Positions 32,293 to 51,261 of a stretch of DNA of 64,000 nt are shown here, piece by piece. Every line of letters begins with the position of its first letter. Positions within the stretch are counted from its first letter, which is position 1. The position numbers and the translations under genes are program-made. Below the pieces are notes generated by a model. That model did not search any database. It was not told the DNA's origin and saw only the letters and a program-made list of their open reading frames with translations. The DNA is taken from positions 124,001 to 188,000 of the IMG/VR virus record IMGVR_UViG_3300049855_000348. The stretch is one strand, 5' to 3'.

Positions 32293-32984
32293 TTGGGTAG
32301 TTCTCCGTCATCGCCCCAGGCATCGCCATCGCCCTTCTTGGCTTGCTGGATCTTGAGTGCGGCCAGAGCGGCGGCATCGCCGTTCTTCTGGGCATTGACC
32401 AGGAGTTCAGCCACCTTGTGAACCTGTTCACTGGCCTTCATCGCCAGTTCGAGGGATTTGAGAGTCGCACCGGTGTTGTCGGCGATGACTGTCGCCACTG
32501 GCATCGACAACTGCATGCTGTCCAGAACTTCGGCACGATCGAGATGCACCTGGAATAGCGAGATGGCCATTGCACGGTTGTGCTGGGCCAGTTGCAGGTC
32601 CTTGTTCAACAGGACTGCGAGGTTCTTCTCGAACGTACCCTGATCGCTCAGATCGAACGTAGTGGGTGCTGAAGCATCGGCCTTGGCCACTGTTCCACGT
32701 GGAACAACGCTTGGCAGCGCCACGGCCTTTGGACCACCAGCGGCAGCAGCCGGCTGACCCTGGCCGGAACCGCCCTGCCCGCCCGGCTGACCCTGGCCGC
32801 CAGCGGCTTGCGCGACCGCATTGGCCGGTTGAGCGGTCAATGGCGGGGCGATGGCCTGCGACTGTGGCGTAGGCGGCGGGAGCGCCACCGCCTTGTGAGC
32901 CGGGTTCTGAGAGGTGGGCAGCGTCCCGAGGAGGTCATCCAGCATCTGGATGGCGGGTGGTTCTGGGGGCTGCTCTCCACTCAT
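32289..32984 (-). CDS. Hypothetical protein (231 aa): P/G-rich N-terminus and helical C-terminus; weak small-terminase candidate
   Basis: ATGA overlaps at both ends; function speculative. Confidence 0.7.
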   Translation of the reverse strand: MSGEQPPEPPAIQMLDDLLGTLPTSQNPAHKAVALPPPTPQSQAIAPPLTAQPANAVAQAAGGQGQPGGQGGSGQGQPAAAAGGPKAVALPSVVPRGTVAKADASAPTTFDLSDQGTFEKNLAVLLNKDLQLAQHNRAMAISLFQVHLDRAEVLDSMQLSMPVATVIADNTGATLKSLELAMKASEQVHKVAELLVNAQKNGDAAALAALKIQQAKKGDGDAWGDDGELPK

Positions 32985-33709
32985 GCGTTGAAGACCTGAT
33001 CCAGCAGCTTGGTACGCTCCTCATCCGACAGCACGGCCTCTTTGAGTTCGGTGCTGCGGGGCGTGGTGAGCTTGCCGGGATTGGTGATCTCGTGATGACC
33101 CTGCGGACGGCCTGCGCCGTCCTTGCCGTAGCCAGCCGGCACGTTCTTGCCGTCAGCGCCAGGGAAGATGTCCTTGGCACGCTGCGCTGGGCGCTTGTCA
33201 GCCGCATCATCGTTGAAGGACTGCTTGTCGTCCGGGTTTGCAGCATCTTCAGCGGGCTGGACGGTGAGTTTTTCAACAGCCGTGCTGCCACCTTCAACAC
33301 TCTCGACAGCCTGCACCACCGGCTTGCCGGAGGCACCCTGCTGACGATTCGCCATGGCATCCTGCTGGATGCCTTTGGAGGCGGCAGTCGGGCTGATCTT
33401 GGTCGGCTTCGGCTGGGCGGTGAGGTTCTTGTTCACCTGCTCCTGCTGCTTCGGGTCGATACCCTGCTGGTGGGCCATGTCCGCCTTGACGGCCTGATCA
33501 CCCTGCTGGGCGTTGGCGGCAGCGGTGGCCTGCACTCCATTGGCCAGTTGCTGGGCGGCAGTCTGCACCTGCTGCTGGGGCTTGCCCGGTGCCATCTTCA
33601 CCGGCTTGCCGGGAGTGGGCAGGGCGGTGCCGCCAGCGGCCTGGGCATTGGAGGAACCCTGAAGTTCTTCCAGGATGGCGGCGACGTTTTCGTGGTAGAC
33701 TCGGCGCAT
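32981..33709 (-). CDS. Hypothetical Q/A-rich protein (242 aa)
   Basis: Operon-coupled; YHEN, ILEE and LKEA motifs. Confidence 0.8.
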   Translation of the reverse strand: MRRVYHENVAAILEELQGSSNAQAAGGTALPTPGKPVKMAPGKPQQQVQTAAQQLANGVQATAAANAQQGDQAVKADMAHQQGIDPKQQEQVNKNLTAQPKPTKISPTAASKGIQQDAMANRQQGASGKPVVQAVESVEGGSTAVEKLTVQPAEDAANPDDKQSFNDDAADKRPAQRAKDIFPGADGKNVPAGYGKDGAGRPQGHHEITNPGKLTTPRSTELKEAVLSDEERTKLLDQVFNA

Positions 33710-33712
33710 AGG

Positions 33713-34381
33713 TCAGACCTTTTTGAACTGGATGGCCAACTGGCTCTTGAGCACCCCAGCACCAACAGGCTTGAGCGCCTTGGACTGGACGATGCGACCG
33801 AAACGACGGAGGGCGAGCGGATCCTTGGGATCGAGGGCGCTCTGCGTCTTCATGACGCGCACGATCTCCTTGACCAAGTTCGGCGACATGACCTTCGAGC
33901 CCGGATCGACAGTCGTTCCCAGGGGAGCGATAGCACGGGTGACGTTGTCGAAACGGCGAATGCGCAGACTCGAACCGTCACGGCTGATGCGGTAGTGCTT
34001 GCCCTGTTTGCCGACGGCAACGATGGCAAGAATCTTGCTCTCTTTGAGATCGAAAAGGTTGGAATAGCCGATGTAATCCGCATTTTGGTAATGCAGACCA
34101 CCCTTGCTCAGGAAGGTGATGTCGTAGCCCAGATCACGCAGCACCCACGACAGCGTCTGGAGCGTGCTGAGGAACTGGCCGTAGTCGCTGATGTCGATCG
34201 GGTAGTCGGTGCCACCCCACTTGTTCTTGATCGGACCCTTGGCCTCGACCTTCTTGACGATCGTGTTGATGCGATCGGCCTTCTCGTCGGAGCCGCTTTC
34301 ACCGGTGGCGTAGGCCATGCCGTTGTAGGGCCAGCGATTCTGGAAGCCGGCGTTCTTGCGTTGGATGGTCAGCAGGTCCAT
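33713..34381 (-). CDS. Hypothetical protein (222 aa)
   Basis: 3-nt gaps to both neighbours; globular composition. Confidence 0.8.
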   Translation of the reverse strand: MDLLTIQRKNAGFQNRWPYNGMAYATGESGSDEKADRINTIVKKVEAKGPIKNKWGGTDYPIDISDYGQFLSTLQTLSWVLRDLGYDITFLSKGGLHYQNADYIGYSNLFDLKESKILAIVAVGKQGKHYRISRDGSSLRIRRFDNVTRAIAPLGTTVDPGSKVMSPNLVKEIVRVMKTQSALDPKDPLALRRFGRIVQSKALKPVGAGVLKSQLAIQFKKV

Positions 34382-34384
34382 GGG

Positions 34385-34942
34385 TTACTCCACCAGCTTG
34401 GCGAGATCTTTGACGGCGTTCATCACGGCCTGGATGGGGCCACGCAACGTCAGTTTGTGAGTCTTGATCGAGTTGTCGCTGGCCTTGTTCTCGGTCAGCG
34501 CCTGGATGAGCAGGTCGACGGTCTTGATATTGGCCGTCACCTCGGTCATCTTGTCGGACACGTCCTGGAGAGTGTTCAACGACGTGGCAGGCTTCTTGAG
34601 CTTGACTTCTGGGTTCGTGGGTGGCTTTGCGCCCTGATTTTGGCCGTTGGGGGCTCCAGCCTTGTTTTGTGGCTGCATGCCGCTAGCCTGCCCGGCCTTG
34701 GGATCCACCGCTGGGGCTTCACCCGGCATATCGAGGGGCGACGTGCCACCAGCTTCGCTGATGATATCCTCGGGCTTCATGCGAACGCCGAGTTCTTCCA
34801 GAACGCTGTTGACGCGGGGATCCACCTTGCCGCGCTCTTCGCGCATCTTGTTTTCCGAATGGTTCGGATCGACGCCCATCTTCTGGAGGGCTTTGGCGAC
34901 TTGGGCATTCACTCCACCGGTGCGTTTCTGAAACATGGTCAC
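34385..34942 (-). CDS. Hypothetical protein (185 aa), first gene of the long minus-strand late operon
   Basis: SD GGGAG upstream; contains IISEAG and ends LVE. Confidence 0.8.
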   Translation of the reverse strand: MTMFQKRTGGVNAQVAKALQKMGVDPNHSENKMREERGKVDPRVNSVLEELGVRMKPEDIISEAGGTSPLDMPGEAPAVDPKAGQASGMQPQNKAGAPNGQNQGAKPPTNPEVKLKKPATSLNTLQDVSDKMTEVTANIKTVDLLIQALTENKASDNSIKTHKLTLRGPIQAVMNAVKDLAKLVE

Positions 34943-34975
34943 TCCCGGCTATCAGCCTGTCACATAGGTACCAGC

Positions 34976-36427
34976 ATGTTGACCTTCTCCTACTCGAACG
35001 CTTGGACAGCCACCTACCAGGGTGACGTTCGGGGCGTCGCGTGGCTGAAGCGTCTGTTCACCTACACCGACATGGCAGACACCCGGCACAAGCAGCGGCT
35101 GGGTTATTTTCCCTCCTACTGCACGCTCGACACCGATGGGTGCCGGATGTCCCACGGGCAGGTGATCCACGCTGTACGGCACGCCAAAGCCGACGGCATC
35201 CCCATCACGATCAATGACCCCAGTTGCCGGTATCTGGTCGAATCTGGTCCTATCCCGCCAGATTACCTTCCGGAGATCACCGGGTACGACTACCAACTTT
35301 TGTCAGCCCAGATCGCCCTGGGCAGCGGGCACGGGCTGGTGGTGATCGCCACCGGTGGTGGCAAGACCGTCGTGATCGGGATGGTGCTCAAAGCTCTGGC
35401 CACCATGACCAACGTTCAGGGTATCCTGATCCTGATCTACTCGAAGGACCTGCTGAACCAAACCGCCAAGCGGATGGAGAAGTACGGTGTCCCAAGTGAC
35501 GACATCGGTGTCATCCACTCCGACATCCCACCAGCCAAGCAGGCTATCGCAGCCACGAAGCGCATCGTGCTCGCCACCCACACCTCCATCGCCAAGTACC
35601 ATGGGGTGATCGAACGGACGCAATACGTGCTGGTCGATGAGGGTCACCGGGCGGTCGGCCCACTTTACTCCGCCCTGTTCGGCAAGCTGCCCAACCTCGT
35701 GAACATCCTCGGCTTCACCGCCACACCATGGGACAACGAAGCTGAGCGGATGAAGATGCTGGCGATCTATGGCCAGATCCTGGTGAACATCCCGGTGCGC
35801 TTCCTCATCGATCGCGGTGTGTTGATGAATCCCGAGGTCTACTTCATCAAGCTCTACTACAAAGACCGCGACATCAAACTGTGCAATCAGATGGAATGGC
35901 GTGAAGCCAAGACTCAGTTCATTCTTGAAGACCGTAACCGCAATCTGCTACCGATCGTTGCTCTGAAGAAGTTCGGTGGTCGCATGCTCGTCATCTATGA
36001 CGATCTCGACCATGGCGAGCATCTACAACAACTTTACATCGAGCAAGGTTTCGAGACTCGTCTCGCTGAAGGAAAGACTTCCACTAAGAATCGTGCGAAT
36101 GCCATCGAATGGTTCGAGCAAGACTGCGAGCCTGGACAGTGGGGCAAGGTTCTGCTCGCCTCGAAGGTATTCGATGAGGGTGTCGACATCAAAGGCGGCT
36201 GCGACATTTTCTTCGCCATCGGTGCCGGAAAAGATGTCAGCAAAGTTGCACAGCGACTCGGTCGTGCTCTACGAAAAAACCGCAGCGGTAAACTGCGGTG
36301 TTTCGACTGCCAGGACAGCAATCATCCAATCCTGTCGCGGTGGTCATCCACTCGTCGTGGGGCGATCGAGGATCTGAAGATTCCGGTGAAGACGATCAGC
36401 CTGGAAGAGTTTGCGGTTCTGACTTGA
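34976..36427 (+). CDS. uvsW: SF2 DNA helicase, UvsW-like (true start 34976, not 32957)
   Basis: IATGGGKT (motif I), VDEGH (II), GFTATP (III), VFDEGVDI (V) and QRLGRALR (VI). The upstream part of the tracked ORF is the antisense shadow of minus-strand genes. Confidence 0.9.
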   Translation: MLTFSYSNAWTATYQGDVRGVAWLKRLFTYTDMADTRHKQRLGYFPSYCTLDTDGCRMSHGQVIHAVRHAKADGIPITINDPSCRYLVESGPIPPDYLPEITGYDYQLLSAQIALGSGHGLVVIATGGGKTVVIGMVLKALATMTNVQGILILIYSKDLLNQTAKRMEKYGVPSDDIGVIHSDIPPAKQAIAATKRIVLATHTSIAKYHGVIERTQYVLVDEGHRAVGPLYSALFGKLPNLVNILGFTATPWDNEAERMKMLAIYGQILVNIPVRFLIDRGVLMNPEVYFIKLYYKDRDIKLCNQMEWREAKTQFILEDRNRNLLPIVALKKFGGRMLVIYDDLDHGEHLQQLYIEQGFETRLAEGKTSTKNRANAIEWFEQDCEPGQWGKVLLASKVFDEGVDIKGGCDIFFAIGAGKDVSKVAQRLGRALRKNRSGKLRCFDCQDSNHPILSRWSSTRRGAIEDLKIPVKTISLEEFAVLT

Positions 36428-40370: not shown

Positions 40371-41015
40371 TTACCTGTAAATGGTGATTTTAGCGGCAAC
40401 ATCAAGATCGTCCTTACGAACGCCCAAAGTGCCAGGAATGGGTTTCGCATAGGCAACCAGTGATATCCGTCCTAAGACATAGGCGTCAGCGATATTGTTG
40501 TCGCTGGATTCAAAAGTCCAGCGTTTGTAGACCCCGAGCATCACTTGGTCCTTCTCACACGTCCCTTTGCCGGTGGCGAACTTCTTCAGTCCATTGGTGC
40601 CACAGCAGGCGAAGTGCCAGTCGGTCCTGCTCATCATGATTCTGAAGTGCCAGCCCAGACCACCGAGCTTGGCCATCTGATGAGCTTGAGAGAAGGCGAA
40701 GTCTTCCATCACCGCACAGACCTTGCGACCAGCAGCGATCTCGGTGACAAACTTGTAGGTCTCACTGAACAAAGTGACGATGCGGTGGACTTCATCCATC
40801 GGCGTCGAGCCGGCCTTGGTAGAGATCAGTTTCTGGCCAAGCAATGTGCCCTGGTCGTCAAAGATACAGACGCCAGTGCCGGTCATCGACTGGTCGATGC
40901 CAACATAGACCCCACCCTTCACCCAGGGAGAGACTTGCACGCATGCGGGTACGAGGTTCTTTTTCTTAGCCACTGACACCCTTCCGTCGCGCCCATCGAC
41001 GTTCGTGTTCGACAT
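40371..41015 (-). CDS. ruvC: RuvC-like Holliday junction resolvase (start 41015 or GTG 40973)
   Basis: VGIDQSMTGTG, VMEDFAF, LKKFATGKG...KDQV and NIADAYVL: RuvC acidic catalytic residues. Confidence 0.85.
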   Translation of the reverse strand: MSNTNVDGRDGRVSVAKKKNLVPACVQVSPWVKGGVYVGIDQSMTGTGVCIFDDQGTLLGQKLISTKAGSTPMDEVHRIVTLFSETYKFVTEIAAGRKVCAVMEDFAFSQAHQMAKLGGLGWHFRIMMSRTDWHFACCGTNGLKKFATGKGTCEKDQVMLGVYKRWTFESSDNNIADAYVLGRISLVAYAKPIPGTLGVRKDDLDVAAKITIYR

Positions 41016-41226
41016 TCACCGCTGCGACTTCTTCAGCTTTCAGCGATGGTGACGTGAGCGCACGGAAGTGTTCAGCCTTGAGGCGGATCTCATGTGCGAC
41101 ACGACGCAGTTCGGCTTGGGCCACACCTGCGCCGTGCCCGCCAGCCGCTACCTTCTCTCGATTCAAACGCTGGCTGTTGGCCAGGGTCACGAGATCGTCA
41201 AAGATGCGGATGGCGTCAGGAGTCAT
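40966..41226 (-). CDS. Small helical hypothetical protein (86 aa)
   Basis: TGATG overlap with the upstream gene. Confidence 0.7.
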   Translation of the reverse strand: MTPDAIRIFDDLVTLANSQRLNREKVAAGGHGAGVAQAELRRVAHEIRLKAEHFRALTSPSLKAEEVAAVNVEHERRWARRKGVSG

Positions 41227-41777
41227 CAGACGTGGTTGTAGCCGTCCCCACCGTTATCGACGATGCTCTTGGCAGCAACGTTGATCGATGGAGCGGTACC
41301 AGACTTCGGCCAGTTGGTGTCGAGATCGCGGTTGGCGATATCGGTTTCGTTGACGATGAACGGACGGATCAGACGTTCAGCCCATCCACCGACTTCAACC
41401 TGAGCCAAGGTGGCTGACTTGTAGAGGATCATGCGACCTTCGTCGCCGACCTGAGCACCTGCGGACATGATCTTTTCGATCACACCGCCACCAACGACAG
41501 CGCGGGTCGTGTAGGTGTACTCGGATGACGACTTGAGGAACGTGTAGTCCTGGTTCGGTTTGAGACCACTGTTGGTCGGCACGAAGCCAGAGCCATGCAC
41601 CGTCGGGACACGCAGAACTTTTGACGGCACCTCTTTCTGCGCTGTCAGACCCGGCTGAACAACGAAGTTCATGTCCCCGATGGTGAACTGGAGGACCTGA
41701 TTCTTCTGGTTGTTCTGCGTCTGGAGTGCAGGGTTCTGATTCACTGCCGTCGAATCAAATGGATAGGTGGCGAGCAT
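41226..41777 (-). CDS. Late-expressed beta-rich hypothetical protein (183 aa, MLATYPF...), possible tail/baseplate component
   Basis: gcTACATA (41796-41801), then GGAG SD, then ATG 41777 argue for this start rather than 41849. The structural role is inference. Confidence 0.6.
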   Translation of the reverse strand: MLATYPFDSTAVNQNPALQTQNNQKNQVLQFTIGDMNFVVQPGLTAQKEVPSKVLRVPTVHGSGFVPTNSGLKPNQDYTFLKSSSEYTYTTRAVVGGGVIEKIMSAGAQVGDEGRMILYKSATLAQVEVGGWAERLIRPFIVNETDIANRDLDTNWPKSGTAPSINVAAKSIVDNGGDGYNHV

Positions 41778-41845
41778 GGCGTGTTTCTCCACGCCTATGT
41801 AGCTGGACGCAGCGAAAATCAGAGTCAGGAGGGCCAGGGTCCTGA

Positions 41846-44800
41846 TCATACCGGTTTGATCGCCCAGGAGGTCTGCTCATCGACCATGGTGGCCACGATG
41901 GTACCAGCACGGCTGGAACCCGGCACATCGGCGTGGGTGATGACGAAGATCCGCTTCACCCGATTGACCATGGAAGCGATCAGATCCTGCACGGCACGGC
42001 GACCCTTCACGTCGAGGGCGTCGAAGACTTCGTCGAGGGCCAAGAAGCCGGCACGGTGCCGAGAACGCTGACGGGCCAACTCGAAGATCGAGAATAGCGC
42101 AGCCAGATCGGTCCACTTGCGCTGACCGCCTGAGCGCCGGCCATACCGTTCCTGGTAGGTCAGATCCGAGTTGAAGGTGAGGGTCATCTTCCCGCCGAAG
42201 TGTTGTCCGATGTAGGACTGGACGACGAGATTGAGTTGTTTCACGCTCTGGTCAAGCAGGAAACCCCTCATGGAGCCCTTAGCGGCAAAAGCCTTGTCCC
42301 AGAACGTGATGTAAGCCGATTTCAGGTCCAGGGCATGCGCCTGAGCCTTTGAGGTTTCCATCGCAGCGAACGCAGCCTGTCGGTCGGCGACCAAACGGTC
42401 CTTGGCGATCTTCAGAGCGGCAGCCGGGTCGGTGGCGGTGAGGTTGCGCTCCTCTTGAGCCAGGGCCGCCTCGGTAGCGGCTCCACCAGCCTCCAGGGCC
42501 GACTTTTCTTGCAGGAGGGCCGAGAGTTCCCCGGTGAGGCGTTTGTGCTCATCCTGAGCCTTCTGGAGGGCTTCTTTGGCCGAGACGAGATCCGTCACCG
42601 CCTGTGATGCCAGGATCAGATCGGCCTTGGTCCGGTAGGCACTCATGATGGCAAGTAGACCGTCGAGGATCCGCTGGAAGCCGGAGGCAGTGATGATGTC
42701 CTCCAGCCTCTCCGGCATGGGCAGGCACTGGTTGGCCTGTTCTGCGAATCGAGCATCGACCTGCTGCCGGCGTACGGCGATGGCCTGCAACCGAGCTTCC
42801 ATGTCCGGCAGGGACTTGGTCAGCGTTTCGAGCACGGTCTTGGCCGCAGCCAACTGGGCCAGGGTGGCGAGACCCTTGAGGGATTCATCAGCCTGAACTC
42901 GCAGTGCCTGGGCTTCGCTGATGAGTTTGGTCTGTTCGGCTTTGTAGGTCCGGTACCCTGCTCGCAGGCTCTCCAACTCAGCGTTGAGACCCTTCACCAC
43001 GTTGACCATCGATTCGCCATTGATCGAAGTCAGACACGTCGGGCAGTCACCACCAGTGGTGAGCTTTGAGAGCTTTTCAGCCTTCTGTGAGATCGGCGTT
43101 GCTTGCGTGGTGGTGGCCTCGGCCTTCGCACCTTCAGCCGCAGCCAACTGATCTTTCTGTGTTGCCTCTTGGCGGAGGACGTTGGCACGTTCATTGGCAG
43201 CAACCACTGCCGCTTCCTGTTTCAGTGCCGCTTCGAGACCAGTGATGCGATCACGAACAGTGCCGATCTCCGACTTGAGGATGTTCTCCTCGTTGGTGAT
43301 GTTGTTGTGATCGATGCAGCGGGAATTCCAAAGCGATTGAAAGCGAACGATGTTCTTGTTGGTCTCTTCCGCCTTGTCGACGTTGGCCTTCGCCTCGACA
43401 CGGATCGCCTCGACACCACCAGAGAGTAGTTGGACCTTCTCGGTCGCAGCCTTCACCACATCGTTGCTGTACTGAATAGTCTGCTCACCACTGGCTTCTG
43501 CATACATCAAACGTTCGCGTTCTTGACGCATCTTGACCTGATGGTCGTTCTTGCGCTGGGCCACTGAACTCAACATCACCTGATGATTCTTTTCAGCGTC
43601 GAGGATCTGCGTTTCGATGGCAGAGATCTGCGCTGCTGAGCGTTCGATTTCACCAGCACGAACCTTCTGAATGTTGGCCTGTTGTTCGAGTTGATCACTC
43701 ATGAGTTTCTTCAACTCACGAGTCTTCTCCAGGTAAGCGTCGAAGCGTTCGAGACCCAGCATCTCTTCGATCATGGCACGACGTTTCTTCTCGTCTCCGG
43801 TCATGAAGTTGGCCGTCACGTTTTGGCCCATGATGTAGGAACGACTGTAGGTCTCACGGTCGATGCCGATGAGATCGATGATCATCTTCTGGGTAGCTTT
43901 CGGATCACCCTTCTCGAATGACTCTTGATAGACGCCATCCTTGTAGACCTTCACACCAGTACCGCCGAGGTCGTGGTACTTGCGGAAGCGTTCGATGCTC
44001 CAGCCGTTGGCATGGTTCACCCGAACGTAGCAGTTCTTCCCCTTGCCGGTGAACTGAGGGTCGTAGACCACATCGTCAGCCTTCATCTCATCACGGATGG
44101 TCTCGCCGAAGTAGCACCAGAAGATAGCTTCGAGGAACGTGCTCTTGCCGGCACCGTTCTCACCTTCGAGGTACCACACGCCTGGACGCAGGTCATCAAA
44201 ATTGATGGTGATCTTTTCCTTCACACCAAGGAAGCCCTCAAGAGTCAGGCTGGAGACTTCACCATCGAAAGCCATGCCACCCTTTTCGGCATCTTGGAAA
44301 CGTGAATTCACCTCAGCGATGATCGATTTGCCGAACTGGATGGTGATGTCCACATCCAATTGACTATCGCCAGTGATGACCGACTTCACGAAGGGCTCGA
44401 CGAGGCCAGCGGCGGAGGTGGCTTCAACACCGAGGACTTCAACCTCCTGATCACGAATCGCTTTCTCGATGACCGACTCTTTGCGTACCGAGATGACACC
44501 GGCAGCTTCGAGCTTCAGTTGCAGGGCTTCGTGCTGCTCATCGGTGACGAGGTCGTCATAGATGACAGTGACGAAGCAGTCCTTGAGTGTGGTCAGATCC
44601 TGCGGCAGATCGCTGACACCGAGAACCTTGAAGGCATCGTGGTGTGGATTGAGGATGAACCGGTCGTTACCGGTATCCATGTCGAGGACCATGATACCAC
44701 GCTGGTCACCGGCATCGCCGAAATTGAACTGGAGGGGTGAGCCGCAATAGGTCACCCGGTGATCCATGCGCTGGAAGACGTGGAAGTGGCCAGAGTAGGT

Positions 44801-45337
44801 GGCCTTGAATGGGGCGAACACGTCGGGACCGACAGCACCAGAGAAGGTGGTCTTGTAGCGGGTGTTCTGTACCGCACCGTTGATGCCGAGGTGACCGAAC
44901 ACGGTCATCTTGGCGGCACGCTCGGGGAACTGCCGGGCGAAGTCCTGCACGAAGGCGACGATCTTCGACTGGTCTTCGTAGTAGGGGATGAACAGGAAAT
45001 GATCACCTACCGGGGTGATCTCACGGAAGACCTTGATCTTCGGATGCATATCCAGTCCGTCGAGACTGCTGACGGAGGTAGAATGCTTGAGGTTGAGATC
45101 GTGGTTGCCCAGGGTGAGGAACACCGGCCACTTGTCGGCGAGCTTGCGAAAGAAGTTGATGGCAGCCGACTGGCTGACCACATCGACCGCTTCACGGGTA
45201 ACCAGGGCATCACCCATGCAGACGACGGCCTGCACGCCTTGTCGTTGGAACTCTTCAATGATCCAGTCGCCGGTTTTGATGATGCGATCCAGCCCCTGTG
45301 GCTGGAAGTGGATGTCAGAGAAGATTCCAAGTTGCAT
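41846..45337 (-). CDS. Fused Mre11/SbcD (gp47-like) nuclease + Rad50/SbcC (gp46-like) ATPase in one ORF
   Basis: Metallophosphoesterase motifs SDIH, MGD, GNHD, GH and GHFH, then Walker A GENGAGKS, coiled coil with CPTC hook, signature SGGQ, Walker B LDEVFDALD and VITH; no intervening stop. Start 45337 or 45340. Confidence 0.93.
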   Translation of the reverse strand: MQLGIFSDIHFQPQGLDRIIKTGDWIIEEFQRQGVQAVVCMGDALVTREAVDVVSQSAAINFFRKLADKWPVFLTLGNHDLNLKHSTSVSSLDGLDMHPKIKVFREITPVGDHFLFIPYYEDQSKIVAFVQDFARQFPERAAKMTVFGHLGINGAVQNTRYKTTFSGAVGPDVFAPFKATYSGHFHVFQRMDHRVTYCGSPLQFNFGDAGDQRGIMVLDMDTGNDRFILNPHHDAFKVLGVSDLPQDLTTLKDCFVTVIYDDLVTDEQHEALQLKLEAAGVISVRKESVIEKAIRDQEVEVLGVEATSAAGLVEPFVKSVITGDSQLDVDITIQFGKSIIAEVNSRFQDAEKGGMAFDGEVSSLTLEGFLGVKEKITINFDDLRPGVWYLEGENGAGKSTFLEAIFWCYFGETIRDEMKADDVVYDPQFTGKGKNCYVRVNHANGWSIERFRKYHDLGGTGVKVYKDGVYQESFEKGDPKATQKMIIDLIGIDRETYSRSYIMGQNVTANFMTGDEKKRRAMIEEMLGLERFDAYLEKTRELKKLMSDQLEQQANIQKVRAGEIERSAAQISAIETQILDAEKNHQVMLSSVAQRKNDHQVKMRQERERLMYAEASGEQTIQYSNDVVKAATEKVQLLSGGVEAIRVEAKANVDKAEETNKNIVRFQSLWNSRCIDHNNITNEENILKSEIGTVRDRITGLEAALKQEAAVVAANERANVLRQEATQKDQLAAAEGAKAEATTTQATPISQKAEKLSKLTTGGDCPTCLTSINGESMVNVVKGLNAELESLRAGYRTYKAEQTKLISEAQALRVQADESLKGLATLAQLAAAKTVLETLTKSLPDMEARLQAIAVRRQQVDARFAEQANQCLPMPERLEDIITASGFQRILDGLLAIMSAYRTKADLILASQAVTDLVSAKEALQKAQDEHKRLTGELSALLQEKSALEAGGAATEAALAQEERNLTATDPAAALKIAKDRLVADRQAAFAAMETSKAQAHALDLKSAYITFWDKAFAAKGSMRGFLLDQSVKQLNLVVQSYIGQHFGGKMTLTFNSDLTYQERYGRRSGGQRKWTDLAALFSIFELARQRSRHRAGFLALDEVFDALDVKGRRAVQDLIASMVNRVKRIFVITHADVPGSSRAGTIVATMVDEQTSWAIKPV

Positions 45338-45343
45338 CATCTC

Positions 45344-45371
45344 ATCCTAGCGACATTTTGGTCTAAGTCAA
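45344..45371 (-). promoter_or_regulatory. Sigma70-type promoter TTGACT-16-TAGGAT with a TAGAC-N6-GTCGC spacer
   Basis: Minus strand TTGACT TAGAC CAAAAT GTCGC TAGGAT gagATGATG; the second ATG is 6 nt from the -10 hexamer. Confidence 0.85.
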
Positions 45372-45670
45372 ATGGACAGCGGCTTGCCCGCCAGCACGTC
45401 ATTTAGGGTCCAACGAGACCTCATCACTTTTTATCACACGTTCTCGTCTGATGGGGATTACCCGTGTGGTACCTGGGAATCTAGTCCCTTGGCGGTTAGA
45501 GCCACCGGCTCGATCTACGTCTGATGTGAGGATTGAATTACCCCAGCATTTCAACTACTCGGATCAGGAGTCACCGTCCCGGCTTCGCGTAGCCTCGAAA
45601 TGCCGAGGTTTCCGGCTTGGCTACCATATCGGTGAAGTTTGGTGGGCTACCGACGCTCCCACCAGGAATC
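45372..45670 (-). ncRNA. About 300-nt non-coding, hairpin-dense segment; candidate structured RNA or cis element
   Basis: No credible ORF; at least six short stems and a duplicated GGGTAAT...CATCAGACG unit. No known RNA family recognised. Confidence 0.35.
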
Positions 45671-45676
45671 CATGAT

Positions 45677-46237
45677 TCAGATTGGGAGAATCACCATGTA
45701 GGCGAACAGCATCTGCTCATCGGGCGCACGCACGTGGCTACCTGGGCTGAAGACGAAGAGGGTTGTGTTGGGGCGATGGTTGTCGAGCAACCACTTCTCC
45801 AGATCCACCATGGTGGCGAACTTGGTCAGCACGGTCTCTGCCGCACTGCCCTTCCATGGGAAACGGGTGTCCGGTGCCTGACGGATATCCATCTTCAGCT
45901 TGGCAGCTTCGGCAGCAGCCTTCACCCCTTCGATGGTGATGAACTTGCCATCCGAGGTTTGACTGACGCTGACTTCACCTTGGATGAGCTTGCGGGTCTT
46001 GCCGTCAGGGAAGATCACGACGTTCACCCAGCGTTCGACGCCGTTCTCAGACACCTTGGTCTTGATGACGGCGAAGCACCAACGACCGGCGAGCGACTTG
46101 TCGGTGGCGACGATGCGCTTGGCAGCTTCCTGAGGGGAGGCATGACCGGTTTCATCGATCATCTGTCCCATGAAGTCGTACCACGTCTGGCCGACGTAGG
46201 TGGGAATTTGCTTGGTGGTGACGCTGGCAGTAATCAT
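45677..46237 (-). CDS. Hypothetical protein (186 aa)
   Basis: 1-nt gap to the upstream gene; typical codon usage. Confidence 0.75.
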   Translation of the reverse strand: MITASVTTKQIPTYVGQTWYDFMGQMIDETGHASPQEAAKRIVATDKSLAGRWCFAVIKTKVSENGVERWVNVVIFPDGKTRKLIQGEVSVSQTSDGKFITIEGVKAAAEAAKLKMDIRQAPDTRFPWKGSAAETVLTKFATMVDLEKWLLDNHRPNTTLFVFSPGSHVRAPDEQMLFAYMVILPI

Positions 46238-47215: not shown

Positions 47216-47579
47216 CCTGTTCCTTGCCGACCGATTTCTCGGAACGCCAGACCGCTTCGAGGCGACGCAGGAAGTCCACGTCACTGGCCTTGGGTGTCTT
47301 GGCGCTCTCGACGTGGTGGAAGCGAGCAGCGCCCTGTGCCTTGCGGATCTCCTTGGTACCGATGTGTAGGTGGACCACATCAGCCTTGGAGTGCTTGCGG
47401 ATCTGAGGGATTGCTCCAGCAGTGCCGTCGATCGCCAGAACGGCGACCGGCAGATCCGGAATGACACCGCTCACTTCCTCAGGCGTCTTGTAGAGGAAGG
47501 CTACGCGGTTGGCGAGCCAGCGTCCTGCTAGCTCGACATGCTTGTCCGTATCGCCGGTGATGAGGAAGATGGTTTTCAT
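47184..47579 (-). CDS. Hypothetical protein (131 aa, MKTIFLITG...), possible degenerate P-loop kinase fold
   Basis: ATGA overlap with the RNase H stop; N-terminal IFLITG strand without an intact GKT. Confidence 0.65.
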   Translation of the reverse strand: MKTIFLITGDTDKHVELAGRWLANRVAFLYKTPEEVSGVIPDLPVAVLAIDGTAGAIPQIRKHSKADVVHLHIGTKEIRKAQGAARFHHVESAKTPKASDVDFLRRLEAVWRSEKSVGKEQDGRTPIKLPV

Positions 47580-48559
47580 GATGTCCACTGATTCCTGTAC
47601 GTGGTGCAGAGAAACTGGGCTGTTTGATTGGCTTGTTCGGTGGCGAACTGATGACGTTGTTCCAGCCAGAGGCTGAAACGGGTGAAGTTGGTGGCGATCT
47701 GTCGAATGCTCTTCTGCTCAAGCTCAGAGACGATGACTTTCACCTTCTGGTGAATCCTTGAGTTGAAGAGATCCATCATGGAGAGATTCAGAGCTACGAC
47801 AGCACGAGCATCCTGTGCCACAGGAACTGGTGTCGGGTTGTTCTTGCTCTTACGCGGAGTGACCATGCCAGTCTCTTCGGCCAGCAGCGTCGGTACACGC
47901 TTTTCGATGATCGCCTTGGTGGCCGTGACTTCACCGACACCGATGAGTCCTGGGAGGTTGTCCGAGGCATCGCCCTGAAGGGCTTTGCAAAGCAAGGATT
48001 CCTGAGGGGTCAAGCCGGTCGACTCGACAGTACCATCACCCTTGTAGCGCCAGATCTTCCCATCTTCGCCAAGCTGATAACGCAGTGAATGAACTGGGTC
48101 GATCATGTAGGTGGTGGCATTGATCAATTGCAGGTAGTCGTTATCCGCAGTGATCAAGATGCCGGGCTTACCAACGTTGAGAGCCACCGCAGCAGCGGCC
48201 ATATCATCAGCTTCGATCCATGGGTACTGGAAGTTGGGGCAACCCATCAAGGAGATGAGTTCTGGCAGTACCTCTTCGATGCAGGTCGTGGCCATGACAT
48301 GCGCTGCTTCACGCACTGGATCCTTGGCCAGTTTCTCGGCACGATGTGCCTTGTAGCTGGGATGGACCTGCTTCCGCCAGCTTCCGCCCTTTGGATCCAG
48401 ACACCAGTAGACACGGGTGGCTTGGTATGAGCGGATGAATTGAGCAACCTTGGCGATGATCTCCAAAGCCACGGCTGGAGGACCGTGACGAAGAGACTCG
48501 GGCGGCAGCGAGTTCGCTGTCGCATTGGCAAGGTAGGATGCATCGACGTAGAGGTACAT
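47576..48559 (-). CDS. rnh: 5'-3' exonuclease / RNase H (T4 rnh, FEN/PIN family)
   Basis: YVDASYL, SWRK...YKAHR, IEADD, TADNDYLQL and ALQGDASDNLPGLIGVGEVTA; TGATG overlap fixes the start at 48559. Confidence 0.92.
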   Translation of the reverse strand: MYLYVDASYLANATANSLPPESLRHGPPAVALEIIAKVAQFIRSYQATRVYWCLDPKGGSWRKQVHPSYKAHRAEKLAKDPVREAAHVMATTCIEEVLPELISLMGCPNFQYPWIEADDMAAAAVALNVGKPGILITADNDYLQLINATTYMIDPVHSLRYQLGEDGKIWRYKGDGTVESTGLTPQESLLCKALQGDASDNLPGLIGVGEVTATKAIIEKRVPTLLAEETGMVTPRKSKNNPTPVPVAQDARAVVALNLSMMDLFNSRIHQKVKVIVSELEQKSIRQIATNFTRFSLWLEQRHQFATEQANQTAQFLCTTYRNQWTS

Positions 48560-49089
48560 CACTCGGCCTTGTGGATCATCACGTCGCACGGGTCTTTGTC
48601 CCATGCATCGAAGGTGTCAGCCAGGGTGGTGAGATAGGAAAGATCGGCTGACGATCCAACCACTCGATTGTTGCCGACGACGATCTTCACATCACGCACG
48701 TTGGCGAGGTTGATGAAGGTCATCTCTTCCTTGTCGCTGCTCAGCAGGGCTTTCTTGAGCAACGTGGCGAAGTTGTCGTCTTCGCCTTCACTGGTTGGGT
48801 TGATGCGGAAGAAGTGAGTGTCGATCGGATAGATGGAAGCCTTCAGATCCCCCAGGAAACGAACCGTCAGGCTGCCCTGATTCTTGAGCGCCTGATTGAT
48901 CTGTTCCCGTAGAGAGACCGTGAAACTGCCGAGCACCGACGGGACCATGATCCCATCGTCATTGAACGGCAGTTCGAGCGGATCAACCTCAGCCGCCTTG
49001 GCGACCAACTTGAGCGCAGCGATGGTGCGCTGGACTGAGAAGTCCGGTCCAGTCTTATCCACCCTTCCGAAACGGATCACTTGGTTCAT
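48559..49089 (-). CDS. Hypothetical protein (176 aa)
   Basis: 1-nt overlaps on both sides. Confidence 0.75.
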   Translation of the reverse strand: MNQVIRFGRVDKTGPDFSVQRTIAALKLVAKAAEVDPLELPFNDDGIMVPSVLGSFTVSLREQINQALKNQGSLTVRFLGDLKASIYPIDTHFFRINPTSEGEDDNFATLLKKALLSSDKEEMTFINLANVRDVKIVVGNNRVVGSSADLSYLTTLADTFDAWDKDPCDVMIHKAE

Positions 49090-49683: not shown

Positions 49684-51261
49684 CTACTTGGGAGTCGCTA
49701 TAGGTGGCGGTTGGAGCCCCATACCCCAGGCAGCATTTTCAGCCTGCTGACCTTGAGTGAGTTGCACGACCGCATTTTTGGCTTTGACCGAGTGAGTGCC
49801 GAACGACGAGGCACCCAACAGCGACTCCATACCAGCCTCTGGACTGTCTGGGGTGAATGGAGGTTGGATCGCCAGGGTTCCACTGCTGGCAGCTTTGGCG
49901 ATGGCAGCCGTGGTCGCCTTGGCTACCGCAGCGTTGTAGTTCATCGTTGAGGCCGAGTCCTCGGAGATACGCAGCGTCTTGTAGTCGACATCGGTCATGA
50001 TGGTGTAGCAGTCGTCGAAGTCGCGGACCTTCGAGGCATACAGGCGCATCTTGCCCATCTGCTTCTCAGCTTCGGTCTGATTCAGCGTCAGCACACAGTC
50101 CAACACATGCATGACAGCGTAGGAGTCGGCGATGTCTTCCTTGCCGATCTTCTCCTTGCTGGCTGCATTACGATTCGACTGGAGTGCGGTGACGATCGGG
50201 ATGTCCATCTCCATGGCGATGGCACGGACCTCTTCAGCGATCTGCTTGAGCTTGGCGTAGTCACGCTTCATGTCGACGTTGTCGGGATCGTTCGGCAACA
50301 TGATGGTCAGGTAGTCGAGAATGATCACGTCCGGCTTCGGGCCACCGAGCAGCAGGTAGTCATTGAGCGATCCACGAACGGTGTTCGCTGAGGCTGTGCC
50401 AGTTGGATGCTGGATGACGTAGAGTTTCCCCATCGTCCCTTTGTCTTTGATCTTCTTCAGCGCATCGTCGAGGATCTGAGGGTTGTTGCGACGCTCGTCG
50501 GAGGAAACACCACCGATGCAGACATCGTAGCGAGCCTTGGTTTTCTCAGCAGAAAGCTCGAAGGTGAAGTGGTAGACGTTCAAACCATTGAGAACACAGC
50601 AGGCACCGACATTCACGAGGTTGATCGACTTACCAGAGCCTGTCGGACCCATGAAGGCTGACAGGGCAGCTACCTGGAAGCCACCACCATGCTTGGCATT
50701 GAAGGTTGCCCACGGTGTCTTCACACCGGCCTTGAGCGTCTTCTCCTTGGTAACACGGGCGACAACTGACTCAGCCTCAGTGCTGAGGTAGGCATCAACC
50801 GGTTGTGCCAACGTGTGGCGAACGGTGATCTCTTCGAGGAGCTTCGGAATCGACTTGTGATTCTTCTGAGAGATGAGCTTGGCAGCCTCGATGATGAAGC
50901 GATCGTAGTCGACCGCCTTCATGTGATCCATCAGACAGTCTTTGGTGTATTTCTCTTCGGTCTGGTAGTTCTTGGTGAAAATTTCATCGATATATCGGAC
51001 GAAATTTTCCAACGCATCGTAGACGCTGAGATGTTTCAGCAGTTCTTGTTTGATGATCGAGATCGTCGGGAGTTCTTTGTACTTCGTCGTATGCTCATCG
51101 ACGATCTTGAAGATCACCTGGATGTGTGGTTCATTCCAGTGATCGACCTTCAGCCGATTCTTCCACTTGACCAGGAAGCTCTGGTCTTTGGTAACGATGA
51201 CAATCGCCTGCTGCTCGATTTCCGGAAGGAATTCAAGTTTGCGAGTCGGAATGTCGGTCAT
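49684..51261 (-). CDS. gp41: Replicative DNA helicase, T4 gp41/DnaB-like
   Basis: MGPTGSGKS, HFTFEL, IILDYL, TALQSNR, IADSY and KVRD motifs. Confidence 0.92.
   Translation of the reverse strand: MTDIPTRKLEFLPEIEQQAIVIVTKDQSFLVKWKNRLKVDHWNEPHIQVIFKIVDEHTTKYKELPTISIIKQELLKHLSVYDALENFVRYIDEIFTKNYQTEEKYTKDCLMDHMKAVDYDRFIIEAAKLISQKNHKSIPKLLEEITVRHTLAQPVDAYLSTEAESVVARVTKEKTLKAGVKTPWATFNAKHGGGFQVAALSAFMGPTGSGKSINLVNVGACCVLNGLNVYHFTFELSAEKTKARYDVCIGGVSSDERRNNPQILDDALKKIKDKGTMGKLYVIQHPTGTASANTVRGSLNDYLLLGGPKPDVIILDYLTIMLPNDPDNVDMKRDYAKLKQIAEEVRAIAMEMDIPIVTALQSNRNAASKEKIGKEDIADSYAVMHVLDCVLTLNQTEAEKQMGKMRLYASKVRDFDDCYTIMTDVDYKTLRISEDSASTMNYNAAVAKATTAAIAKAASSGTLAIQPPFTPDSPEAGMESLLGASSFGTHSVKAKNAVVQLTQGQQAENAAWGMGLQPPPIATPK

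What the first reader, a model, noticed from the sequence alone, without database searches (positions are those of the whole stretch)
41846..45340. Natural single-chain Mre11-Rad50 (gp47-gp46 / SbcD-SbcC) fusion
All nuclease and ABC-ATPase motifs lie in one 1164-codon frame. Established: these are separate genes in T4, bacteria, archaea and eukaryotes; a fusion is known in Mimivirus (R555). The junction retains an in-frame ATG at 44275 (MAFDGEV...) behind AAGGGTGG, so the phage may make both the fusion and free Rad50, which would tune stoichiometry. It may also have arisen by recent loss of a stop codon.
Basis: partly seen in the sequence, partly recalled or inferred. Interest (0 to 1): 0.66.

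Follow-up and report, generated by a model that had tools for sequence, protein, structure and literature searches.

The report
Single-chain Mre11-Rad50 nuclease of a jumbo phage
This uncultured 220-kb phage really does encode its DNA-end-processing nuclease (Mre11) and ATPase (Rad50) as one 1164-residue protein, but fusions of this kind were described in 2011 and are common in phage metagenomes, so this is an ordinary new member of a known family.

Summary
Window 41846-45340 (-) is one open 1164-codon frame with an N-terminal Mre11/SbcD nuclease, a helix-loop-helix, and then a complete Rad50/SbcC ATPase with coiled coil and CxxC hook. All catalytic motifs are intact.

- **Not an assembly artefact or a recent stop-codon loss.** About 25 full-length fused homologues (78% down to about 30% identity) come from independent metagenomes. 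The junction is gap-free in the close clade. A separately assembled 112-kb contig reproduces the stretch without a difference.
- **Only copy.** The fusion is the only Mre11 or Rad50 homologue in the 220-kb genome, and it lies in a replication/recombination module.
- **Not new.** Yoshida, Claverie and Ogata (2011) described Mre11/Rad50 fusions in Mimivirus, a Bacillus phage, plasmids, bacteria and eukaryotes, and noted their abundance in aquatic viral metagenomes. The cultured jumbo phages XacN1 and Xoo-sp13 carry an independently arisen fusion.
- **Part of a large fused clade.** In a tree of Mre11 domains the window's protein lies in a well-supported clade of 78 representatives, of which 75 are fused; two of the other three are gene-calling or sequencing artefacts and one could not be checked.
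- **Dual-product idea unsupported.** The junction ATG occurs only in this genome (1 of 24 aligned homologues). Its upstream ribosome-binding-like match is only in the top 6% of internal ATGs.

Verdict: a real feature, and a new member of a known kind.

The parts
41846..45340 (-). Whole fused Mre11-Rad50 (SbcD-SbcC) gene: 1164 codons plus stop.
   Evidence: ORF list and translation; Pfam and PHROG domains; 100% self-match as the only copy in the genome.
45345..45348 (-). AGGA ribosome-binding-like motif 5-8 nt upstream of the ATG at 45340.
   Evidence: Sequence read directly; duplex energy -4.0 kcal/mol.
44621..45340 (-). Mre11/SbcD phosphoesterase (nuclease) domain, residues 1 to about 240, with motifs I-V (D9/H11, D44, N79/H80, H150, H185/H187).
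   Evidence: Invariant columns; Pfam Metallophos; Foldseek matches to T. maritima Mre11 and E. coli SbcD.
44450..44620 (-). Capping domain of the Mre11 part, residues about 241-297.
   Evidence: AlphaFold2 secondary structure. Foldseek alignments of about 320-390 columns to whole Mre11/SbcD chains. Domain borders are approximate.
44285..44413 (-). Two helices (residues 310-321 and 330-352), read as the helix-loop-helix Rad50-binding domain of Mre11.
   Evidence: AlphaFold2 model. The position matches the helix-loop-helix described for T. maritima Mre11 and for fusion proteins (PMC3175470). Binding itself is inferred.
44273..44284 (-). Junction: AAGGGTGG (44277-44284), then C, then the in-frame ATG (44273-44275, Met356). 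Residues 349-355 have low model confidence and form a very short linker.
   Evidence: Sequence; pLDDT below 50 for 349-355; Met present in 1 of 24 homologues; duplex energy in the top 6% of internal ATGs.
43748..44269 (-). Rad50/SbcC N-terminal ATPase lobe, residues 358-531, with Walker A (393-401, window 44138-44164) and Q-loop Q506.
   Evidence: Pfam AAA_23; invariant columns; PDB profile matches to SbcC 6s6v_C and T. maritima Rad50 3qf7_A.
42287..43747 (-). Antiparallel coiled coil (residues 532-758 and 775-1018) around the CPTC zinc hook (C766-C769, window 43034-43045).
   Evidence: AlphaFold2 helices; C766 and C769 invariant; weak Pfam Rad50_zn_hook; profile matches to Rad50 hook structures 1l8d and 6zff.
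41849..42286 (-). Rad50/SbcC C-terminal ATPase lobe, residues 1019-1164: signature SGGQR (1070-1074), Walker B DE (1103-1104), D-loop D1110, H-loop H1136.
   Evidence: Invariant columns; Pfam SbcC_Walker_B and SMC_N.

Best explanation
The gene encodes a genuine, evolutionarily fixed single-chain Mre11-Rad50 (SbcD-SbcC, T4 gp47-gp46 type) enzyme. It is the only such enzyme of an uncultured 220-kb freshwater-sediment phage with direct terminal repeats.

The chain runs in this order: nuclease domain, capping domain, a helix-loop-helix, a linker of about 5-7 residues, then the Rad50 ATPase with a long coiled coil and a CxxC zinc hook.

By analogy with solved Mre11-Rad50 and SbcCD complexes (inference), two chains should pair through the Mre11 domains, the ATP-engaged Rad50 heads and the zinc hooks. 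This would give the equivalent of an M2R2 complex with a 1:1 ratio fixed by covalent linkage. The helix-loop-helix would bind the base of the coiled coil. The enzyme would use ATP to clamp DNA ends and resect or open them, feeding recombination-dependent replication and repair of the phage genome. That role fits the neighbouring RuvC-like resolvase, 5'-3' exonuclease and DnaB-type helicase genes.

What is shown: the domains, motifs, conservation, single-copy status and genomic context. What is inferred: dimerisation, cis binding of the helix-loop-helix, and the enzymatic activity.
For: - One open frame with both domain sets.
- All catalytic residues invariant across 24 fused homologues.
- About 25 full-length fused homologues at 78-30% identity from NCBI, JGI, ENA and Logan assemblies.
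- A gap-free, conserved junction in the close clade, consensus ...VN..FQDV.DTGAIF....
- The only Mre11 and Rad50 homologue in the complete genome.
- An independent assembly reproduces the region.
- AlphaFold2 model with mean pLDDT 81 shows the expected domain order. Foldseek matches Rad50 (7zr1) and Mre11/SbcD (3qg5_C, 3tho_B, 7yzp_A, 6s6v_A). The PDB profile search gives SbcC at 2e-26.
- Neighbours are a RuvC-like resolvase, an exonuclease and a DnaB-like helicase. The gene order is shared with a 191-kb relative contig that also carries the fusion.
- Mre11-domain tree: the window lies in a 23-row all-fused subclade (SH-aLRT 99) inside a 78-row clade (SH-aLRT 99) with 75 fused rows.
- The fused order Mre11 then Rad50 is compatible with the T. 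maritima complex geometry (PMC3175470).
Against: - There are no biochemical, proteomic or RNA data for this protein or any close relative, and no RNA run holds the sequence.
- The linker between the last Mre11 helix and the first Rad50 strand is about 5-7 residues. Yoshida et al. estimated 9-12 residues to span about 28 Å in the T. maritima complex. The cis arrangement may therefore need partial unwinding of the helix or a different geometry.
- The model's pTM is only 0.43, so the relative placement of domains is not reliable.
- Three relatives carry frameshifts inside the Mre11 part. If these are real rather than sequencing errors, the gene is dispensable in some lineages.
Confidence: 0.85

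Rival explanations
1. Dual products. Ribosomes also start at the in-frame ATG of codon 356 behind AAGGGTGG, so the phage makes both the fusion and free Rad50 and thereby tunes stoichiometry.
For: The ATG and the purine-rich stretch are there. Its predicted pairing with the 16S rRNA 3' end (-7.1 kcal/mol) is the strongest of the 25 internal ATGs of this gene, and stronger than at the annotated start (-4.0). The ATG lies within two or three codons of where the Rad50 domain begins: the domain profile starts at residue 356 and the first strand at 358.
Against: Met356 is unique to this genome among 24 aligned fused homologues, and the nearest relative (78% identity) has Ala with Thr in place of the preceding Gly. 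No Met is conserved near the junction in 82 fused proteins. Six percent of the 323 internal in-frame ATGs in the window pair as well or better, and true starts in this phage show little ribosome-binding-site preference. The best-paired bases end 2 nt before the ATG, which is a poor spacing by general knowledge of E. coli-type initiation. No promoter-like site lies near the junction.
Confidence: 0.06
2. Artefact or very recent event: two adjacent genes were joined by an assembly or sequencing error, or by a recent loss of the stop codon in this one genome.
For: In some jumbo phages the two genes are separate but lie in the same frame, only a stop and three codons apart (Erwinia phage pEa_SNUABM_12). 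A one-base change could therefore fuse them, and that is probably how the XacN1-type fusion arose.
Against: About 25 independent assemblies hold the same fused architecture, with identity down to 36-40% and a gap-free junction. Logan's separate assembly at depth 55.7 is identical over 2101 bases. The word search with the whole protein and with the Mre11 part found no intact stand-alone Mre11 or Rad50 of the close clade; its short hits were cut or frameshifted copies. In the exhaustive search, the first intact stand-alone Mre11 (P0099) appears at only 30% identity.
Confidence: 0.01
3. The fused protein is not the phage's replication/recombination nuclease. It has a diverged role, for example degrading host DNA or countering a host defence. 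Yoshida et al. suspected a diverged role for cellular organisms that keep both fused and canonical copies.
For: The fused family lies outside the canonical Mre11/Rad50 clades (PMC3175470). Members occur in fungi that presumably also have canonical MRE11 and RAD50 (the second point rests on general knowledge).
Against: Here it is the only Mre11 or Rad50 homologue. SbcCD homologues are near-universal core genes of jumbo myoviruses (PMC7824862). The gene sits among resolvase, exonuclease and helicase genes, in an order shared with a relative. All catalytic motifs are intact.
Confidence: 0.08

Closest known systems
Mre11/Rad50 fusion proteins of the Mimivirus R555 type (Yoshida, Claverie and Ogata, Virol J 2011, PMC3175470)
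   Same: N-terminal Mre11-like nuclease with capping and helix-loop-helix regions, directly followed by a Rad50-like ATPase in one polypeptide. It is the only copy in the viral genome. Homologues are abundant in aquatic viral metagenomes on phage-like scaffolds. The family also has eukaryotic members; here fungal proteins fall in the same clade.
   Different: R555 is 1351 aa and comes from a giant virus of amoebae. This protein is 1164 aa and comes from a tailed-phage-like genome with direct terminal repeats. The linker here is shorter (about 5-7 residues) than the 9-12 discussed in the paper. Direct kinship with R555 could not be tested because no R555 sequence was available in the tools.
Single-CDS 'recombination endonuclease subunit' of Xanthomonas jumbo phages XacN1 (BBA65453.1, 1099 aa) and Xoo-sp13 (QDJ96467.1, 1110 aa)
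   Same: Cultured jumbo phages with Mre11 and Rad50 in one annotated CDS. The alignment with the window's protein runs without a break across the junction (24% identity over residues 5-584, E 4e-22).
   Different: This is an independent fusion event. In the Mre11-domain tree these two sit among jumbo phages with split genes (RsoM2USA, 121Q, pEa_SNUABM_12; SH-aLRT 98), far from the window's clade.
T4 gp47/gp46 and E. coli SbcD/SbcC
   Same: The same two catalytic modules and motifs, a coiled coil with CxxC hook, and a role in DNA end processing for recombination-dependent replication and repair. Structural and profile matches to SbcCD structures 6s6v and 7yzp.
   Different: These are two separate polypeptides from separate genes. 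From my own knowledge, T4 gene 46 precedes gene 47, which is the opposite order. The Rad50 part here is 809 aa, against about 560 aa for gp46 and 1048 aa for SbcC.
Bacillus phage 0305phi8-36 fusion (A7KV18)
   Same: A phage-encoded SbcD-SbcC fusion that is the only copy in its genome (PMC3175470).
   Different: According to the paper, that protein lacks the capping and helix-loop-helix region and one P-loop segment. The window's protein has all of them.

Membership tests
Mre11/SbcD nuclease (calcineurin-like phosphoesterase) | Five phosphoesterase motifs holding the two-metal site: DxH, GD, GNH(D/E), H, GHxH. | tested here: met
   D9/H11, G43/D44, G78-D81, H150 and G184-H187 are invariant in 24 fused homologues. 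Pfam Metallophos E 3e-8. phrog_100 E 2e-43.
Mre11/SbcD nuclease (calcineurin-like phosphoesterase) | Nuclease plus capping-domain fold, followed by a C-terminal helix-loop-helix that binds Rad50. | tested here: inconclusive
   The fold is supported by Foldseek TM-scores (normalised to the target) of 0.55-0.70 to Mre11/SbcD chains. Two helices at 310-352 sit at the expected place. Contact with the coiled coil was not assessed: model pTM is 0.43 and no coordinates were inspected.
Rad50/SbcC ABC-type ATPase | Split ATPase head with Walker A, Q-loop, signature motif, Walker B, D-loop and H-loop. | tested here: met
   G393-T401, Q506, S1070-R1074, D1103/E1104, D1110 and H1136 are invariant or nearly so. 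Pfam AAA_23 at 3e-19 and SMC_N at 3e-13. PDB profile match to SbcC at 2e-26.
Rad50/SbcC ABC-type ATPase | Long antiparallel coiled coil with a CxxC zinc hook at its apex. | tested here: met
   Helices 532-758 and 775-1018 flank CPTC at 766-769. Both cysteines are invariant. Profile matches to hook structures 1l8d_A and 6zff_A.
Fused Mre11/Rad50 proteins (Yoshida et al. 2011) | Both modules in one open reading frame, in the order Mre11 then Rad50, conserved in relatives. | tested here: met
   In the 78-row clade (SH-aLRT 99), 75 rows are fused, two of the other three are a frameshifted copy and a piece of a gene called in pieces, and P0072 could not be checked.
Fused Mre11/Rad50 proteins (Yoshida et al. 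2011) | Common descent with Mimivirus R555 itself. | not testable with these tools
   No R555 sequence could be fetched. Long fused representatives (1350-1390 aa) on giant-virus-like contigs fall in the same clade, but their identity with R555 is unverified.
Mre11-Rad50 complex (functional) | ATP-dependent DNA end binding and Mn-dependent exo- and endonuclease activity as a dimer of heads. | not testable with these tools
   Needs purified protein. Complex prediction was not run, because dimerisation is a family-level inference and a pass would not have changed the verdict.

The most novel reading that the evidence does not exclude
In this one phage lineage a secondary internal start has arisen on top of an ancient fusion: Met356, behind the strongest ribosome-binding-like site of the gene. 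Infected cells would then make both single-chain Mre11-Rad50 and free Rad50, shifting the head stoichiometry away from the 1:1 ratio enforced in all relatives.
Probability: 0.06. Interest if true: 0.45.

Novelty: new member of a known kind. Interest (0 to 1): 0.22.

Why it matters
This case has little novelty in itself. It adds a complete, well-conserved example from an uncultured jumbo-phage lineage to a fusion family that was described in 2011 but, as far as the literature searched here shows, never studied at the bench.

Two modest points of value came out of the work.
- The survey shows that fused forms are a large, coherent clade with phage, giant-virus-like and fungal members, and that at least one further independent fusion exists in XacN1-type phages. 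This sharpens the 2011 picture of sporadic, recurrent fusions.
- A natural single-chain Mre11-Rad50 with a fixed 1:1 ratio and a very short, conserved connector could be a convenient object for structural and single-molecule work on how the Mre11 helix-loop-helix couples to the Rad50 coiled coil.

Tried and rejected
- **Close DNA relatives.** Megablast of 41000-46000 against cultured phages found nothing. The pattern-based scan of IMG/VR with the whole protein confirmed no relative.
- **Junction-only search.** tblastn of residues 270-450 against cultured phages gave only short Walker-A matches and said nothing about fused versus split.
- **Apparent split or shortened relatives.** All that could be looked up were artefacts or damaged copies.
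  - P0069 lies on a contig where the gene switches frame six times.
  - P0010 has two frameshifts and P0025 has one break inside the Mre11 part.
  - P0081 is one piece of a gene called in pieces on a eukaryote-like contig, next to a G-alpha gene.
  - P0072 could not be looked up.
- **Intron hypothesis.** I considered an intron to explain the gaps in L008 and L009. I dropped it because tblastn coverage of the query is continuous across frames.
- **Literature.** Searches for other descriptions of phage Mre11-Rad50 or SbcDC fusions returned only the 2011 paper. The XacN1 paper and the jumbo-phage review do not mention a fusion.
- **Promoter scan.** There is no site near the junction. The single site upstream of the gene is at chance level.
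- **Reads.** Only contigs, not raw reads, were available. The three low-share runs hold fragments of relatives, and none bridges the junction.
- **Not run.** Complex prediction was not run. A second fold of single domains was not needed.
Full report
**1. What is in the sequence**

The window is bases 124001-188000 of a 220,489-bp IMG/VR virus record with direct terminal repeats, rated 100% complete. By size it is a jumbo phage.

On the minus strand, 41846..45340 is one ORF of 1164 codons.
- Pfam places a calcineurin-like phosphoesterase at residues 2-151.
- The Rad50/SMC-type ATPase modules are at 362-1138 (AAA_23, SMC_N, SbcC_Walker_B), with a weak zinc-hook match at 752-793.
- PHROGs gives the SbcD-like family for 1-348 and the SbcC-like family for 363-1138.

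In an alignment with 23 fused homologues, every catalytic residue of both enzymes is invariant or nearly so. These are the five Mre11 motifs, Walker A, Q-loop, CxxC hook, signature motif, Walker B, D-loop and H-loop.

ATG 44275-44273 encodes Met356 and is preceded by AAGGGTGG at 44284-44277.

**2. Is it real?**

The word-index protein search returned about 25 full-length proteins of 1109-1278 aa with the same architecture. Identity ranges from 78% down to about 30%, and the proteins come from NCBI, JGI, ENA and Logan assemblies.

In the close clade the Mre11 profile ends and the Rad50 profile begins on adjacent residues. There is no gap, and the connector is conserved (consensus ...VN..FQDV.DTGAIF...).

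A run from a freshwater sediment metagenome holds the whole 2.1-kb stretch in a 112-kb Logan contig at word depth 55.7, without a single difference. It may be the source sample. This is therefore a second assembly rather than second DNA. Raw reads were not available.

Together these results exclude an assembly artefact and a recent loss of a stop codon.

**3. Context**

The genome has no other Mre11 or Rad50 homologue. The single weak second match to the SbcC profile covers only coiled-coil positions.

Neighbouring genes on the same strand include:
- a RuvC-like resolvase (40371-41015);
- an exonuclease (47576-48604);
- a DnaB-like helicase (49684-51261).

A 191-kb relative contig carries the fused gene with DnaB- and 5'-3'-exonuclease-type genes upstream in the same order. 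The helicase has no cultured relative above 27% identity, so the lineage is uncultured.

**4. Structure**

An AlphaFold2 model built on the 24-sequence alignment has mean pLDDT 81 and pTM 0.43. It shows, in order:

| Residues | Element |
|---|---|
| about 1-240 | Nuclease domain |
| about 241-297 | Capping domain |
| 299-307 | Low-confidence loop |
| 310-321 and 330-352 | Two helices |
| 349-355 | Low-confidence connector |
| from 358 | First Rad50 strand |
| 532-758 and 775-1018 | Coiled coil, around CPTC at 766-769 |
| 1019-1164 | C-terminal ATPase lobe |

Foldseek's best PDB matches are Rad50 of the Chaetomium MRN complex, then T. maritima Mre11 and E. coli SbcD. A profile search of PDB sequences puts SbcC first.

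The two helices lie where the Rad50-binding helix-loop-helix of Mre11 lies. I did not test whether they bind the coiled coil of their own chain.

**5. How it most likely works**

This section is inference from the solved complexes of the family.
- Two chains form the equivalent of an M2R2 head through the Mre11 dimer interface and the ATP-engaged Rad50 heads, and are joined at the far end by the zinc hook.
- ATP binding and hydrolysis switch the head between a closed state and a DNA-cutting state.
- The enzyme processes DNA ends and hairpins for recombination-dependent replication and repair.
- Covalent linkage fixes the ratio at 1:1 and removes the need for co-translation or assembly.

One open point is that the connector is shorter than the 9-12 residues estimated from the T. 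maritima complex (PMC3175470).

**6. The dual-product idea**

- Met356 is present in only 1 of the 24 aligned proteins. The 78%-identical nearest relative reads DKTGAIF where this protein reads EKGGMAF.
- Among 82 fused proteins, 10 have any Met within 18 residues around the Rad50 start, and none at a conserved place.
- The upstream pairing with the 16S rRNA 3' end (-7.1 kcal/mol) is the best among this gene's 25 internal ATGs. It is still matched by 6% of the 323 internal in-frame ATGs of long ORFs in the window.
- Presumed true starts pair hardly better than internal ATGs (median -3.85 against -3.0). This is a rough proxy based on the first ATG of ORFs of at least 150 aa.
- The best-paired bases end 2 nt before the ATG.

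I rate internal initiation as possible but unlikely, at about 6%.

**7. Comparison with what is known**

Yoshida, Claverie and Ogata (2011, PMC3175470) showed that Mimivirus R555 is an Mre11/Rad50 fusion.
- They listed twelve more fusions: Bacillus phage 0305phi8-36, Clostridium kluyveri plasmids, a Deferribacter megaplasmid, other Firmicutes, slime moulds, a moss, a diatom and prasinophytes.
- They found close R555 homologues abundant in aquatic metagenomes, on scaffolds with phage-like genes.
- They argued that the Mre11-then-Rad50 order fits the T. maritima complex.

Among cultured phages, XacN1 (1099 aa) and Xoo-sp13 (1110 aa) have one annotated CDS covering both modules. Stenotrophomonas phages RAS14 and CM1 match it over its full length, although RAS14's annotated CDS covers only the last 897 residues. 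Their relatives carry two genes, in two arrangements:
- In pEa_SNUABM_12 the two genes are in the same frame, separated only by a stop and three codons.
- In 121Q and RsoM2USA they are in different frames.

The ESM Atlas returned 30 look-alike clusters; all ten listed are about 930-1140 aa with 52-129 members, carry Metallophos plus AAA_23, and are labelled as viruses, mostly Uroviricota.

**8. Survey and tree**

An exhaustive HMMER search of 1.84 billion cluster representatives with the Mre11 part found 5107 hits. Among the best 150, 56 or more are at least 880 aa long, and domain profiles confirm both modules in them.

The first intact stand-alone Mre11 proteins appear only at about 30% identity.

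I built a maximum-likelihood tree of 149 Mre11 domains: 77 fused, 69 stand-alone and 3 unclear (quick IQ-TREE search, LG+C20 PMSF, SH-aLRT support).
- One clade of 78 rows has support 99. Of these, 75 rows are fused.
- Two of the three exceptions are a frameshifted copy (P0069) and a piece of a eukaryote-like gene called in pieces (P0081). The third, P0072, ends inside the domain and could not be looked up.
- The window's protein is in a 23-row subclade (support 99).
- The clade also holds fungal proteins from Rhizina, Apiospora and Xylariomycetidae, and long proteins on giant-virus-like or eukaryote-like contigs.
- XacN1 and Xoo-sp13 sit elsewhere, inside a group of split-gene jumbo phages (support 98), so theirs is a separate fusion.

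There are three caveats.
- The sample is the best 150 hits to this query, so it does not test global monophyly.
- It is a quick search without bootstraps.
- R555 itself could not be included.

The pieces of the eukaryote-like gene in L017 were not joined.

**9. Verdict**

It is a new member of a known kind rather than a novelty. The two more speculative readings are respectively unsupported (co-production of free Rad50) and contradicted (recent stop-codon loss).

Noticed in passing
window 41226-41849 (-), probably starting at Met25 = 41777: A gene of unknown function (no PHROG match) lies immediately downstream of the fusion. Its longest ORF overlaps the fusion's stop by 4 nt. It is 46% identical to the gene in the same position after the fused gene on a 124-kb relative contig (L008 8956-9534). 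It could be a conserved partner or simply a syntenic neighbour.
   Followed up: partly
L008 5457-8934; L009 5417-8802; L007 1256-4894: Three relatives carry the fused gene broken by frameshifts, all inside or starting in the Mre11 part. L008 has two shifts, L009 has one break with about 30 residues missing, and L007 has six frame changes. These are either indel errors of the assemblies or decaying copies.
   Followed up: partly
L003 3904-4110 (Erwinia phage pEa_SNUABM_12); L002 3958-4170 (XacN1): In Eneladusvirus phages, sbcD and sbcC are in the same frame, separated by one stop and three codons. In XacN1 the same place is open and about ten residues longer. This gives a plain view of how a one-step fusion arises in jumbo phages.
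   Followed up: yes
P0026 and P0027 (L015 8001-11837): Two fused homologues have an insert of about 100 residues, rich in Ser, Thr and Lys, between the capping domain and the helix-loop-helix. They lie on a sparsely coded contig next to a protein-kinase gene, so they are probably eukaryotic or from a giant virus.
   Followed up: partly
P0077, P0094, P0102; L017 3001-5446: Fungal proteins (Rhizina undulata, Apiospora kogelbergensis, a Xylariomycetidae species) fall in the same fused clade as the phage proteins. One eukaryote-like contig shows the gene called in several pieces, presumably exons. The pieces were not joined.
   Followed up: partly
window 32957-36427 (+): A 1156-aa ORF with a C-terminal DNA helicase domain (phrog_16, E 1e-52) lies on the strand opposite to the surrounding minus-strand replication genes. 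Its first 770 residues or so have no family match.
   Followed up: no
window 45344-45371 (-): A sigma-70-like site (TTGACT, 16 nt, TAGGAT) ends 4 nt before the fusion's start codon and overlaps its ribosome-binding site. The count in the region is at chance level (1 found, 1.0 expected).
   Followed up: no
PHROG profiles phrog_77 (967 positions) and phrog_100 (989 positions): The SbcC match starts at profile position 299, and the SbcD match uses only positions 28-379 of 989. Both profiles seem to have been built with fused members included, so annotation pipelines may label fused and split proteins alike.
   Followed up: no
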